Part shown: positions 41,601 through 44,600 of the stretch, piece after piece | Layout of the letters: each line of letters begins with the position of its first letter | Position numbering within the stretch: position 1 is the stretch's first letter | Origin: Macrostomum lignano | Taxonomy: Eukaryota | DNA: 64,000 nt | Assembly (NCBI GenBank): GCA_002269645.1 | Contig: NIVC01000868.1 | Location: 299,275-363,274 of the forward strand | Reading direction: 5' to 3' | Translations under genes and position numbers: made by a program | The notes under the pieces: generated by a model | Seen by the model: only the letters and a program-made list of their open reading frames with translations | Database searches by the model: none | What the model was told of the DNA's origin: nothing

Positions 41601-44600
41601 CATGTTGGAGTGACACTATAGAGTATGCCATGTTGGAGTGACACTATAGAGTATGCCATGTTGGAGTGACACTATAGAGTATGCCATGTTGGAGTGAGAC
41701 TCGTTATAAGTTTGGCTCTGTAAGTGACTACAGTTTATTCAGCGGTACCAAAAGACTTGTTAAAAGAACAGCAGATTATGAAATGAAGAGGCATTAGATG
41801 GATTCTAGTTATTACGAGCGTATCATTCAGAATATTTACAACTGAAATCTCGGGCACCGTTTAGCTTTTAACCCTTTACTCAATGGTTACCGGATCGGAC
41901 TCATCTCTGATGCCGAACCCCTGTCTGATGGCAGGCTGGCCACAGGAACCGTCGAGCCCTACAACACCGTGGCCTGTCTGCAGGCCTGCGAGCCGCTATC
42001 CAACGGCGTCATCCTGCTGGACAATGAGGCTATGTACGGCATCATCCAGAAGTACTTCGGTGGCTCAATGACCTCCAGTGACTACACACGGGCCAATCGG
42101 CTCTGCGCCCAGCTCATCAGCTCGCTGACCGCCGGCTTCCGGTTCAGCGGCGAGCAGAACGCCACTCTGGCCGACATCTCCACCAATCTGATCCCCTACC
42201 CGCGCCTCATCTACCTGTCGCCTTCGTACGCGCCGATGAGGCGGTCAGGCTACGTGGAGTCCAGCGACAAGCGAGCCGCATCTCAGCAGCTGGTAAGCAG
42301 GACAGACTTTGTAGACTACGCTGTGCTGGAGTGACAGACTTTGTAGACTACGCTGTGCTGGAGTGACAGACTTTGTAGACTACGCTGTGCTGGAGTGACA
42401 GACTTTGTAGACTACGCTGTGCTGGAGTGACAGACTTTGTAGACTACGCTGTGCTGGAGTGACAGACTTTGTAGACTAAACTGTGCTGGAGTGACAGACT
42501 TTGTAGACTACGCTGTGCTGGAGTGACAGACTTTGTAGACTACGCTGTGCTGGAGTGACCGGCTCTTTTGAGATTCGCCATGCTGGAGTGACAGGCTCTG
42601 TTGAGATTCGCCATGCTGGAGTGACCGGCTCTGTTGAGATTCGCCATGCTGGAGCTGGAGTGACAGGCTCTGTTGAGATTCGCCATGCTGGAGTGACCGG
42701 CTCTGTTGAGATTCGCCATGCTGGAGTGACAGGCTCTGTTGAGATTCGCCATGCTGGAGTGACCGGCTCTGTTGAGATTTGCCATGCTGGAGTGACAGGC
42801 TCTGTTGAGATTCGCCATGCTGGAGTGACAGGCTCTGTTGAGATTCGCCATGCTGGAGTGACCGGCTCTGTACAGCGACGAATTGGCAGGAGCAAGACTT
42901 GATAACGATAGAAGAGCAGATGTTGAAAAAAAGCGGCTTTAAGCAGATTCGAGCTGTCAAACAGAATTTTCAAATTCTGTTTCAAAAAAGCAAAACAGAA
43001 AAATTCTCCTGTCGTCTTCTCCCAGGTGGCGGAGGCGCTGTCAGACGAAAACCTGTTCGTCAAAATAGCCGCCAAGAACAAGCCGTTTCTCGCTGCCTGC
43101 ATGATGTTCCGCGGCGCGCTGAGCGTCTCGGAGGGCAAGTCGGTGCTGGGCCGCACCTGGTCGGACCTGTTCGGCCGGGTGAAGATCGCCCACAACGACC
43201 AGCCACCGACGCGAGTCCCGGACACGGGCATCGACGTGGGGCCCTCGGCGCTGGCGGTGCTCAGCAACACGCCAGCCGTGGTTGGCAAGTTTCGAAACCT
43301 CGGCAGGAAGTTTGATTCAATGTTTGGCCAGGGCGCCTTCCTGGCGACCTACCTGGCCAACGGCTACAACAGGGACCAGTTTGTGAGCGCCAGGGAGCAC
43401 CTGAGCTCCATAGACCAGGCCTACATGGAGAGCGTGGACGATCCGTCCGTCTACGACACTCCAACCGCATCGCCGGGCGAGCAGCCGAGGGGCCCTGAGC
43501 AGTACAGGATGAAGTTCAGCCGGCCCAATGGTCCCGGATTCCACGGCCCCAGTCTCGATGGCTCTGGTCTCGATGGCTCTGGTCTCGATGGCTCTGGTCT
43601 CGATGGCTCTGGTCTCGATGGCTCTGGTCTCGATGGCCTCGGTTACACAGGCCCCGGTCCCAGGGGCCCCGGCTCCAAAAGCCCCGGTTCTAAAGGCCCC
43701 GGTCCCAGGGGCCCCGGTTCTAAAAGCCCCGGTTCCAGGGGCCCCGGTTCTAAAAGCCCCGGTTTCCAAGGCCCCGGTCCCAGATACTACGAGGAGTGAC
43801 GCGGTCTCAAAATGCTTTATTTTTTGCTTTTCTTTCTTTATGGGAAAAGCTAAAAATGTGTTTTAAAGATTAATTATTAAAAAAGACTGCAATTTCCTAT
43901 AAAAATAATAGGAAATAAACTGTCAAAAACCAAATTTACTTTCAATTCTCTTTGGTTTGAGAATTTGCGAATTTCTCAATGGGATGCTTTCTTATTCATT
44001 TGAGCTCCGAGAAGCCGAAGCGCATGTAAGGAATCTAAAGAGAGCATTTTACACTCACGTCTTTTTGTCGGCGACTGCGGATGCGCCGGCGGACGGCCCA
44101 GTCTGCCGCCGCTCCGACCGCGGGCTGCCGCACCGGACTCTGCAGGTGTGATCGGCGAGGTGCGTGCGGGTGGGTCACTCTTGCAAGTTTAACTGGCCTC
44201 CCATTTCTTGCCTCGAGCTCTTATCCACTTCAGTATCTTTTGTCCAAGAATCCGGCACACTGAATGACTGAGGGACAGGGGCTGGAGGACCGGAATGGCA
44301 CACTGAATGTCTGAAGGACAGGGGCTGGAGGACCGGAATGGCACACTGAATGTCTGAAGGACAGGGGCTGGAGGACCGGAATGGCACACTGAATGTCTGA
44401 AGGACAGGGGCTGGAGGACCGGAATGGCACACTGAATGACTGAGGGACAGGGGCTGGAGGACCGGAATGGCACACTGAATGACTGAGGGACAGGGGCTGG
44501 AGGACCGGAATGGCACACTAAATGACTGAGGGACAGGGGCTGGAGGACCGGAATGGCACACTAAATGACTGAGGGACAGGGGATGGAGGACCGGAATGGC

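What the first reader, a model, noticed from the sequence alone, without database searches (positions are those of the whole stretch)
42130..42215. Nested tubulin has an altered GTPase-activating region (E254D, D251T)
Seen: [23 protein letters not shown] versus canonical [23 protein letters not shown], so the T7-loop Asp251 is Thr and catalytic Glu254 is Asp. The GGGTGSG nucleotide motif is intact. Established: alpha-E254 activates GTP hydrolysis in beta-tubulin, and engineered E254D slows hydrolysis and stabilises microtubules. Inference: a natural isotype that builds hyperstable, GTP-like lattices, which would fit its pairing with the enzyme that marks stable microtubules.
Basis: partly seen in the sequence, partly recalled or inferred. 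Interest (0 to 1): 0.72.

Follow-up and report, generated by a model that had tools for sequence, protein, structure and literature searches.

The report
Divergent flatworm alpha-tubulin lacking catalytic residues
The flatworm Macrostomum lignano keeps a heavily altered alpha-tubulin gene, sitting inside the tubulin acetyltransferase gene, that has lost the two residues which normally trigger GTP hydrolysis; this kind of odd tubulin has been described before in other organisms.

Summary
Window 42137-42205 (+) encodes [23 protein letters not shown], which aligns without gaps to the alpha-tubulin T7-loop/H8 motif. This gives T251 and D254, and GGGTGSG is intact.

The window is Macrostomum lignano contig NIVC01000868.1. 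The gene has 4 exons (39618-43799) and is already annotated as PAA75679.1. It lies antisense inside an intron of the alpha-tubulin acetyltransferase gene.

It is derived from alpha-tubulin: the best hits are all alpha, it has GQAGxQ, and it has the alpha-specific S9-S10 insert. However, it is only about 40% identical to any alpha-tubulin. It has changed 86 of 196 near-invariant alpha positions, so E254D and D251T are two changes among many:
- The nucleotide loops T1, T4 and T5 are kept.
- T7/H8, H10 (10-residue deletion), the M-loop and H11'-H12 are remodelled.
- The N-terminal MREC motif is MLGK.
- The acidic tail is replaced by a 120-residue Gly/Pro/Ser repeat tail.
- The whole protein has pI 8.6.

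Three genomic copies are intact, with dN/dS 0.06-0.20, so this is not a pseudogene. No orthologue was found outside this species.

Altered 251/254 recurs in divergent alpha-like tubulins, with Toxoplasma alpha3-tubulin as the published precedent. Reduced GTPase activation is plausible. A hyperstable canonical lattice and a functional link to the acetyltransferase are untested.

The parts
39618..39629 (+). Tubulin exon 1 (ATG CTG GGC AAG = MLGK), followed by GTGAGT donor
   Evidence: Sequence. In-frame model. The deposited proteins PAA75679.1/P0400 and P0001 start with MLGK, and the annotated gene starts at this base.
40279..40787 (+). Tubulin exon 2 (residues 5-174): T1-T5 nucleotide-binding loops
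   Evidence: tblastn to alpha-tubulin, 48% identity, E 1e-52. AG acceptor and GTGAGC donor.
40387..40389 (+). Lys41 codon (AAG), the column of alpha-tubulin K40 (acetylation site)
   Evidence: Alignments. The flanking loop GPWKACARE is not canonical.
40684..40704 (+). GGGTGSG tubulin signature (T4 loop)
   Evidence: In the T4 window (alpha residues 140-148), 8 of 8 near-invariant columns are kept.
41935..42292 (+). Tubulin exon 3 (residues 174-293): H6-H8 and M-loop
   Evidence: tblastn. TGGCAG acceptor and GTAAGC donor.
42137..42205 (+). T7 loop / helix H8 motif [23 protein letters not shown]. Thr251 is at 42164-42166 and Asp254 at 42173-42175.
   Evidence: The motif is identical in all three genomic copies.
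43026..43799 (+). Tubulin exon 4 (residues 294-550 plus stop): S8 to H12, then a 120-residue Gly/Pro/Ser-rich repeat tail ending RYYEE
   Evidence: The annotated gene end coincides with this coordinate.
43552..43784 (+). Coding tandem repeats in the tail: (GSGLD)n with a 15-bp unit, and [10 protein letters not shown]-type 30/45-bp units. Copy number differs between the paralogous copies and annotated models (500, 505 and 560 aa).
45229..45833 (-). Alpha-tubulin N-acetyltransferase (ATAT1/MEC-17 family, PF05301) catalytic-domain exons. tblastn segments are 45833-45732, 45615-45448 and 45382-45242, with a GT donor after 45229.
   Evidence: tblastn. 60-66% identical to mollusc, placozoan and cnidarian ATAT proteins.
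44059..44139 (-). ATAT downstream exon-like segment (…[20 protein letters not shown]), flanked by AG and GTGAGT. It lies just 3' of the tubulin gene.
   Evidence: Matches the M. lignano ATAT model P0277. Sequence. The reading frame relative to the previous exon was not resolved.
38234..38274 (-). ATAT downstream exon-like segment ([13 protein letters not shown]), flanked by AG and GTGAGT. It lies on the far side of the tubulin gene, so the tubulin sits in the ATAT intron 38275-44058.
   Evidence: Minus-strand genes span the tubulin gene at paralogous loci L001 and L004.
39929..42872 (.). Tandem-repeat arrays filling the tubulin introns: (GACA)83 at 39929-40259, a 28/58-bp array at 40933-41701, and 32/33-bp arrays at 42301-42872
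   Evidence: They share the core TGCTGGAGTGAC.

Best explanation
This is a real, selectively maintained but extremely derived alpha-tubulin paralogue restricted (as far as the databases show) to Macrostomum lignano. It belongs to the recurrent class of divergent alpha isotypes whose GTPase-activating face has degenerated.

Shown:
- It descends from alpha-tubulin.
- Its nucleotide-binding loops are conserved.
- The T7/H8 catalytic pair (D251T, E254D), H10, the M-loop, the H11'-H12 outer surface, the MREC N-terminus and the acidic tail are replaced.
- Three genomic copies evolve under purifying selection.
- It lies antisense in an intron of the tubulin acetyltransferase gene.

Inferred:
- It still folds, binds GTP and probably pairs with a beta-tubulin.
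- It is a poor or null activator of GTP hydrolysis in the beta subunit it would sit on.
- It escapes MREC-dependent autoregulation.
- It presents a basic, non-acidic surface and tail to motors, MAPs and tail-modifying enzymes.
- It therefore most likely contributes to, or caps, a specialised long-lived tubulin assembly in a particular cell type, rather than acting as a general cytoskeletal isotype with hydrolysis merely slowed.

E254D is one of 86 losses of near-invariant alpha residues, not the key adaptive change.
For: Gene model:
- The model is in frame with GT-AG introns.
- It has the same start and stop coordinates as the deposited transcriptome-based annotation, and the same sequence for the first 487 residues; only the number of tail repeats differs (annotation method in PMC5730564).

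Alpha origin:
- Pfam Tubulin plus Tubulin_C.
- All named top hits are alpha-tubulins at 36-41% identity.
- The PDB top 60 are all alpha chains, E about 1e-95.
- 41% identity to alpha versus 30% to beta.
- GQAGxQ rather than GQCGNQ, and a full-length S9-S10 loop.
- On the alpha side of the alpha|beta split in 90/100 NJ bootstraps.
- Foldseek top hits are alpha chains, TM 0.88.

Selection:
- Three intact copies (window/L003, L001, L004) carry an identical motif.
- Pairwise dN/dS is 0.064, 0.088 and 0.204 (p = 3e-7, 1e-7, 0.005).

Pattern of change:
- Near-invariant columns kept: T1 100%, T4 100%, T5 89%, T7+H8 46%, H10 region 18% plus a 10-residue deletion, M-loop 33%, H11'-H12 36%.
- Specific changes: E71D, D98G, N101G, F255I, Q256S, R402G, W407T, E414N, E415R, E417Q.
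- pI 8.55; the tail has net charge -1 and is 58% G/P/S.
- The AF2 model has no H10 helix and pLDDT below 50 at 239-250, 277-283 and 323-333. A control model of the canonical M. lignano alpha with the same alignment keeps H10 and has no core segment below 50.

Precedent:
- Coccidian alpha3-tubulins have T at 251, H/Q at 254, an altered N-terminal regulatory motif and a very long tail. They were interpreted as having reduced GAP activity (PMC10056924).
- Of 73 divergent alpha-like cluster representatives, 11 have D at 254 and 39 lack D251.
Against: - No expression, localisation or biochemical data were reachable here. The gene id was not found in the literature or in the one supplement searched.
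- Heterodimer formation with beta-tubulin is not shown. N-site residues E71, D98 and N101 are themselves changed, so even GTP binding at the N-site could differ.
- Asp at 254 is chemically conservative, and a new Glu at 247 lies in the T7 loop, so some catalytic activity could remain.
- The purifying-selection test covers only the recent divergence of three near-identical copies (dS 0.02-0.05).
- The AF2 models rest on a shallow alignment of 46 sequences made of canonical alphas.
Confidence: 0.55

Rival explanations
1. The protein is an ordinary lattice-forming alpha isotype whose key adaptation is slowed GTP hydrolysis (as in engineered human E254D). It builds hyperstable, GTP-like microtubules that are functionally coupled to the host acetyltransferase gene.
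For: - E254D in human tubulin slows hydrolysis about 4-fold and suppresses catastrophes (PMC7018511).
- D251 is also implicated in catalysis (PMC10319017).
- A Lys sits at the K40 column.
- Nesting in the acetyltransferase gene is present at all three loci.
- The gene is under purifying selection.
Against: - 86 of 196 near-invariant alpha positions are changed. These include the lateral M-loop (with an insertion), H10 (10-residue deletion), the outer H11'-H12 surface and the tail. Canonical lattice geometry cannot be assumed.
- The K40 loop context is not conserved, and K occupies that column in only 47% of the 45 aligned alphas.
- Gene nesting alone is not evidence of functional coupling.
- Three non-flatworm acetyltransferase loci have no tubulin within 10 kb.
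Confidence: 0.2
2. The protein no longer builds microtubule lattices. It keeps the tubulin fold and nucleotide pocket but acts as a non-polymerising or end-capping tubulin-like factor. Examples would be binding beta-tubulin or tubulin cofactors, or terminating protofilaments because its minus-end face cannot make the next longitudinal contact.
For: - The longitudinal minus-end face (T7/H8 46%, H10 region 18% of near-invariant columns kept, H10 deleted) and the lateral M-loop are the least conserved parts, while T1/T4/T5 are kept.
- pI 8.55 versus about 4.9 for canonical alpha.
- The AF2 model lacks H10 (versus control).
Against: - The alpha-specific S9-S10 insert, PYPR, TNL and much of H7 are retained.
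- Precedents such as coccidian alpha3 are also only inferred, not tested.
- No direct data either way.
Confidence: 0.2
3. The gene is decaying: a redundant alpha-tubulin duplicate drifting toward pseudogenisation. In that case the 251/254 changes are simply neutral damage.
For: - Extreme divergence from a normally very conserved family.
- No orthologue detected in any other species.
- The authors of the apicomplexan survey raise the same possibility for alpha2/alpha3.
Against: - Three copies all keep intact 460-codon cores and canonical splice sites (the splice sites were checked in the window and L001). They differ by 8-18 synonymous against 3-5 non-synonymous changes (dN/dS 0.06-0.20).
- The annotation derives from RNA-seq-based transcript models.
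- Nucleotide-binding loops are selectively preserved.
Confidence: 0.03

Closest known systems
Toxoplasma gondii alpha3-tubulin (TGME49_231400) and its coccidian homologues (Hammondia, Neospora, Besnoitia, Cystoisospora), as described in PMC10056924
   Same: - A divergent alpha isotype in which D251 is Thr and residue 254 is not Glu.
- The N-terminal MRE(C/I) regulatory motif is altered.
- The M-loop and H1-S2 loop are not conserved.
- The C-terminal tail is unusually long.
- It has the same proposed consequence: reduced or absent GTPase activation and stable polymers, with pseudogenisation as the stated alternative.
   Different: - The origin is probably independent (apicomplexan versus flatworm). 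I had no alpha3 sequence to align, so homology beyond 'alpha-tubulin' is untested.
- Residue 254 is Asp here and His/Gln there.
- The flatworm protein also has a 10-residue H10 deletion, a basic pI and Gly/Pro/Ser tandem repeats in the tail.
- It is nested in the acetyltransferase gene.
Engineered human alpha-tubulin E254D (PMC7018511)
   Same: The same residue change at the catalytic position of the alpha T7-H8 face.
   Different: The engineered protein is otherwise wild type. It polymerises normally, hydrolyses about 4 times more slowly and retains D251. The flatworm protein differs from canonical alpha at about 60% of positions and also lacks D251.
Other natural divergent alpha-like tubulins with Asp at 254, e.g. 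Penaeus 'tubulin alpha chain-like' XP_037775157.1 (conserved in four shrimp species), Blattamonas nauphoetae KAK2955454.1 (PTLAD) and Glandiceps talaboti XP_077977661.1
   Same: They are alpha-derived and carry E254D, with or without loss of D251. As a group, such proteins mostly lack the MRE N-terminus and have less acidic tails.
   Different: None is closer to the flatworm protein than canonical alpha-tubulin is (identity 36% or less versus about 40%). They do not form a stable clade with it. They are parallel cases, not orthologues.
Canonical alpha-tubulin (e.g. M. lignano P0101; TUBA1B)
   Same: - The fold and the T1/T4/T5 nucleotide loops.
- GQAGxQ, the S9-S10 insert, and N249, N258 and the PYPR motif.
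- Y224 and N228.
- A Lys at the K40 column.
   Different: - 41% identity.
- MLGK in place of MREC.
- E71D, D98G, N101G, D251T, E254D, F255I, Q256S, R402G, W407T, E414N, E415R, E417Q.
- An M-loop insertion and an H10 deletion.
- pI 8.6 versus about 4.9.
- A 120-residue non-acidic tail.
- Three introns, whereas the canonical M. lignano alpha gene examined is intronless.

Membership tests
Tubulin superfamily | Tubulin/FtsZ GTPase domain plus tubulin C-terminal domain | tested here: met
   PF00091 at E 2.3e-51 (residues 6-212) and PF03953 at E 1.4e-10 (263-385), both above the curated cut-offs.
Tubulin superfamily | GGGTGSG nucleotide-binding signature (T4 loop) | tested here: met
   Residues 140-146, DNA 40684-40704. 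In the T4 window, 8/8 near-invariant columns are kept.
Alpha-tubulin clade | Closer to alpha than to beta, gamma or other tubulins | tested here: met
   All named best hits are alpha. The PDB top 60 are all alpha. 41% identity to alpha versus 30% to beta. On the alpha side of the alpha|beta split in 90/100 NJ bootstraps. Gamma, delta, epsilon and zeta reference sequences were not placed in the tree; none appears among the top hits.
Alpha-tubulin clade | Alpha-type T1 loop GQAGxQ (other tubulins have GQCGNQ) and the 8-residue S9-S10 loop insertion | tested here: met
   [10 protein letters not shown], and [28 protein letters not shown] (28 residues, as in alpha). Beta representatives have 20 residues there.
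Alpha-tubulin clade | GTPase-activating pair D251 and E254 on T7/H8 | tested here: not met
   T251 and D254. Both positions are 100% conserved in 45 aligned alpha-tubulins.
Alpha-tubulin clade | N-terminal MREC autoregulatory motif | tested here: not met
   The N-terminus is MLGK. R and E at these columns are at least 90% conserved in the alpha alignment.
Alpha-tubulin clade | Short acidic C-terminal tail (E-hook), usually ending in EEY | tested here: not met
   The tail is 120 residues, net charge -1, 58% Gly/Pro/Ser, and ends RYYEE. Whole-protein pI is 8.55.
Alpha-tubulin clade | Forms a heterodimer with beta-tubulin and incorporates into microtubules | not testable with these tools
   No multimer prediction or biochemistry was available. 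The monomer AF2 model has pTM 0.73 and mean pLDDT 66.9.
GAP-deficient divergent alpha isotypes (type: coccidian alpha3-tubulin) | Loss of D251/E254 together with an altered N-terminal regulatory motif and an unusually long tail | tested here: met
   All three features are present. The definition is taken from PMC10056924. This is a functional grouping, not a clade.
GAP-deficient divergent alpha isotypes (type: coccidian alpha3-tubulin) | Orthology with the coccidian alpha3 genes | not tested
   No alpha3 sequence was in hand. The NJ tree shows no stable sister for the flatworm protein among 73 other sequences, of which 65 are alpha or alpha-like, so independent origin is likely.
Processed or unprocessed pseudogene | Disrupted reading frame or neutral evolution | tested here: not met
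   Three copies have intact 460-codon cores and dN/dS 0.06-0.20. GT-AG splice sites were checked in the window and in L001.
Nested (intronic, antisense) gene within ATAT1 | Host-gene exons on the opposite strand on both sides of the tubulin gene | tested here: met
   Catalytic exons lie at 45229-45833 (-). Exon-like pieces lie at 44059-44139 and 38234-38274 (-) and match the M. lignano ATAT model P0277. Annotated minus-strand genes (415 aa with PF05301; 424 aa) span the tubulin gene at L001 and L004. On this contig itself the host gene is not annotated. The frame of its downstream exons was not resolved.

The most novel reading that the evidence does not exclude
Flatworms may carry an ancestral linkage between an alpha-tubulin gene and the tubulin acetyltransferase gene. 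Both sampled flatworms (2 of 2) have an alpha-tubulin gene within 5 kb of, or inside, the ATAT gene; none of three outgroups (0 of 3) has a tubulin within 10 kb. In Macrostomum the linked copy would have become nested in the enzyme's intron. It would then have evolved into a basic, GTPase-activation-dead tubulin that builds a dedicated non-hydrolysing polymer, acetylated at K41 and co-regulated with its modifying enzyme.
Probability: 0.1. Interest if true: 0.65.

Novelty: new member of a known kind. Interest (0 to 1): 0.35.

Why it matters
If the protein does co-assemble with beta-tubulin, it would be a natural metazoan test case for microtubule behaviour when the alpha GTPase-activating face is lost. 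It comes from an animal in which RNAi and transgenesis are routine. It also adds a flatworm example to a pattern seen here in many lineages. Fast-evolving alpha-tubulin paralogues tend to lose the catalytic pair, the MREC autoregulation motif and the acidic tail together. That pattern suggests a recurrent route to specialised, non-dynamic tubulin polymers. As it stands, this is an annotated but unstudied gene, and its function is inferred from sequence alone.

Tried and rejected
- Orthologues: neither the word-indexed search nor the exhaustive search of 50%-identity representatives found any relative above 41% identity outside M. lignano. The hits at 55-88% (P0002, P0014, P0058, P0085) are frameshifted older gene models of the same M. 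lignano gene. Only the three paralogous copies could be compared, and all have Asp.
P0001 was used instead.
- Expression: the gene id was absent from the searchable literature and from the held part of the supplementary table of PMC5816591.
- The first dN/dS attempts used a wrong exon-3 offset and gave nonsense. This was corrected.
- A Biopython bootstrap run timed out. It was replaced by a numpy distance version.
- The full-length 415/424-aa acetyltransferase proteins were not returned by the homologue search, so I could not fix the reading frame of the host gene's downstream exons. Both candidate frames are open.
- Pseudogene rejected. Beta-tubulin rejected as the parent family; gamma, delta, epsilon and zeta tubulins were never among the top hits but were not placed in a tree.
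- Shared intron positions with a canonical M. lignano alpha gene could not be tested, because that gene is intronless.
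Full report
**What is there**

Reading the window around the finding and running tblastn with an alpha-tubulin shows a four-exon gene on the + strand:
- Exon 1: 39618-39629 (MLGK).
- Exon 2: 40279-40787.
- Exon 3: 41935-42292.
- Exon 4: 43026-43799.

All introns are GT-AG. The spliced frame is open for 550 codons.

The window is Macrostomum lignano. Bases 31618-51799 are 100% identical to NIVC01000868.1:330892-351073 of assembly GCA_002269645.1. The gene is annotated there with the same start and stop as PAA75679.1 (BOX15_Mlig015062g1; UniProt 'Tubulin alpha chain'). 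That annotated protein differs from my translation only in the number of tail repeats. The annotation was built from RNA-seq transcript models (PMC5730564).

**Check of the observation**

Bases 42137-42205 encode [23 protein letters not shown]. This aligns without gaps to [23 protein letters not shown], anchored by N249, L252, TNL and PYPR.
- Residue 251 is Thr (ACT, 42164-42166).
- Residue 254 is Asp (GAC, 42173-42175).
- Both positions are invariant in 45 aligned alpha-tubulins.
- GGGTGSG is intact (40684-40704).

**Family placement**

- Pfam finds the Tubulin and Tubulin_C domains.
- Every named top hit among 5.8 billion proteins is an alpha-tubulin, at 36-41% identity.
- The 60 best PDB sequences are all alpha chains, E about 1e-95.
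- Over the core, identity is 41% to the canonical M. lignano alpha and 30% to beta.
- The T1 loop reads GQAGCQ (alpha type, not GQCGNQ). The S9-S10 loop has the alpha-specific extra eight residues.
- An NJ tree puts the protein on the alpha side of the alpha|beta split in 90 of 100 bootstraps. It sits on a very long branch with no stable sister.
- An AlphaFold2 model (pTM 0.73) matches alpha chains best, TM 0.88.

However, it is as far from alpha as beta-tubulin is.

**Context of the two substitutions**

Of 196 alignment columns that are at least 95% conserved among 45 alpha-tubulins, this protein keeps only 110. The losses are not uniform:

| Region | Near-invariant columns kept |
|---|---|
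| T1 loop | 100% |
| T4 loop | 100% |
| T5 loop | 89% |
| T7 + H8 | 46% |
| H10 and H10-S9 loop | 18%, plus a 10-residue deletion |
| M-loop | 33%, with an insertion |
| H11'-H12 | 36% |

Individual changes include E71D, D98G, N101G (N-site T2/T3 loops), F255I, Q256S, R402G, W407T, E414N, E415R and E417Q.

Other departures:
- The N-terminus is MLGK instead of the MREC regulatory motif.
- The tail is 120 residues, 58% Gly/Pro/Ser, with near-zero net charge. It is built of (GSGLD)n and [10 protein letters not shown]-type tandem repeats.
- The whole protein has pI 8.55, against about 4.9 for a canonical alpha.
- The AF2 model has no H10 helix and has pLDDT below 50 at 239-250, 277-283 and 323-333. 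A control model of the canonical M. lignano alpha, built with the same alignment, keeps H10 and has no core segment below 50.

A Lys (K41) does occupy the K40 column, but the surrounding loop is not canonical. K occupies that column in only 47% of the aligned alphas.

**Is it a functional gene?**

The assembly holds three copies, consistent with its known redundancy: the window/L003, L001 (PAA68340.1) and L004 (PAA68972.1).
- All three have intact cores and the identical T7/H8 motif.
- Over 460 codons they differ by 8-18 synonymous and 3-5 non-synonymous changes. This gives dN/dS of 0.064, 0.088 and 0.204, with p from 1e-7 to 0.005 against neutrality.

The gene is therefore under purifying selection, at least over the recent divergence of these copies (dS 0.02-0.05). 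No orthologue in any other species was found. The question 'do orthologues carry Glu at 254' stays open.

**Nesting**

On the minus strand, 45833-45229 encodes the catalytic domain of an alpha-tubulin N-acetyltransferase (PF05301). It is 60-66% identical to mollusc, placozoan and cnidarian ATAT proteins. It ends at a GT donor.

Two further AG/GT-flanked segments lie at 44059-44139 and 38234-38274. They match an independent M. lignano ATAT model, P0277. The whole tubulin gene therefore lies antisense inside the intron 38275-44058. At L001 and L004 the public annotation has a minus-strand gene spanning the tubulin gene: 415 aa with PF05301, and 424 aa. I could not recover those full proteins, so the frame of the downstream host exons is unresolved.

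**How unusual is this?**

It is not unique. Among the 150 best 50%-identity cluster representatives, 73 are divergent alpha-like proteins (below 60% identity to canonical alpha). Of these, 43 keep E254, 11 have Asp, 19 have something else, and only 34 keep D251.

Examples with Asp include an alpha-like tubulin conserved in four Penaeus species, a Blattamonas protein with the same T-L-A-D string, and a hemichordate protein. None is closer to the flatworm protein than canonical alpha is, so these are parallel cases.

As a group, the divergent alpha-likes with altered 251/254 mostly lack the MRE N-terminus (4 of 39 keep it). Their tails are also much less acidic.

The published precedent is coccidian alpha3-tubulin. 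It has T at 251, H/Q at 254, an altered N-terminal regulatory motif, non-conserved M and H1-S2 loops and a 40-48-residue tail. Its authors infer reduced or absent GAP activity and stable polymers, or alternatively decay (PMC10056924). The flatworm gene shows the same syndrome.

**Mechanism**

Established:
- Alpha E254 and D251 complete the beta-tubulin active site across the inter-dimer contact (PMC10319017).
- E254D in human tubulin slows hydrolysis about 4-fold and almost abolishes catastrophes (PMC7018511).

Shown here: the flatworm protein lacks both residues, and its entire minus-end longitudinal face is remodelled, while its own nucleotide pocket is largely kept.

Inferred: it probably still folds and binds GTP and may pair with a beta-tubulin. 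It is then unlikely to trigger efficient hydrolysis in the subunit below it. Its basic body, non-acidic tail and missing MREC motif would uncouple it from tail-directed enzymes, many motors and MAPs, and autoregulation. The most likely role is in a specialised, long-lived assembly in a particular cell type. I put this at about 0.55.

The rivals are:
- A non-polymerising or capping tubulin-like factor (0.2).
- Decay toward a pseudogene (0.03).

**Side lead**

In the monogenean flatworm Cichlidogyrus casuarinus, the acetyltransferase gene lies 4.5 kb from a canonical alpha-tubulin gene on a 12.4-kb contig. Acetyltransferase loci of Elysia, Nematostella and Trichoplax have no tubulin within 10 kb. 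Two of two flatworms against none of three outgroups is a small sample. It raises the possibility that the nested gene descends from an acetyltransferase-linked alpha-tubulin gene.

**Verdict**

The alpha placement and the nesting are right. The functional inference is plausible in direction, but over-reads two residues in a protein that has changed almost everywhere outside its nucleotide pocket. This is a new, unstudied member of a known kind of divergent alpha isotype. Interest is moderate.

Noticed in passing
L005 (Cichlidogyrus casuarinus JBJKFK010001477.1) 2279-3996 and 8544-9355; controls L006, L007, L008: In a second flatworm, the tubulin acetyltransferase gene lies 4.5 kb from a canonical alpha-tubulin gene (MREC, K40, D251 and E254 intact), with two genes between them. 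Three non-flatworm acetyltransferase loci have no tubulin gene within 10 kb. This may indicate an ancestral alpha-tubulin/ATAT linkage in flatworms.
   Followed up: partly
window 40933-41701 and 42301-42872: Three different minisatellite families (28/58-bp, 32-bp and 33-bp units) fill tubulin introns 2 and 3. All share the 12-bp core TGCTGGAGTGAC on the same strand. There are 34 exact copies, all inside these two introns, where 0.02 are expected by chance.
   Followed up: partly
window 39929-40259; 44254-45161; 36160-39333: Other long tandem arrays lie in the introns of the nested gene pair: (GACA)83 in tubulin intron 1, a 43-bp x 21 array between the ATAT catalytic exons and the tubulin 3' end, and 32-, 20-, 11- and 28-bp arrays upstream of the tubulin gene. 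Most non-coding sequence in this locus is tandem repeat.
   Followed up: no
window 43552-43784: The coding repeats of the tubulin tail vary in copy number. The genomic ORF gives 550 aa here, but the deposited model for this same contig is 500 aa, with repeats skipped. The paralogues are 505 and 560 aa. The cause could be collapse during transcript assembly or real splicing within the repeats.
   Followed up: partly
window 38234-45833, minus strand: The acetyltransferase gene is not among the genes called on this contig, although its exons are present and 100% identical to the query pieces. It is called at the two paralogous loci (415 and 424 aa).
   Followed up: partly
window whole tubulin CDS: The predicted protein is basic (pI 8.55 overall, 8.72 for the core), whereas canonical tubulins have pI about 5. 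This is unusual for any tubulin.
   Followed up: partly
L002 (NIVC01000387.1) 1164-2292 and 3001-4458: The canonical M. lignano alpha-tubulin gene examined has an intronless coding region. It sits head-to-head with a second tubulin gene (368 aa) about 700 bp away.
   Followed up: no
window 52301-53440 (+), 57119-58123 (-), and up to about 32753 (+): Neighbouring genes: an ORF with a proline-rich region and a SCAF11-like C-terminal domain (PF23030, E 9e-13), an ORF with a Put_Phosphatase domain (PF06888, E 2e-19), and an MFS sugar-transporter gene upstream that is syntenic at all three paralogous loci.
   Followed up: partly
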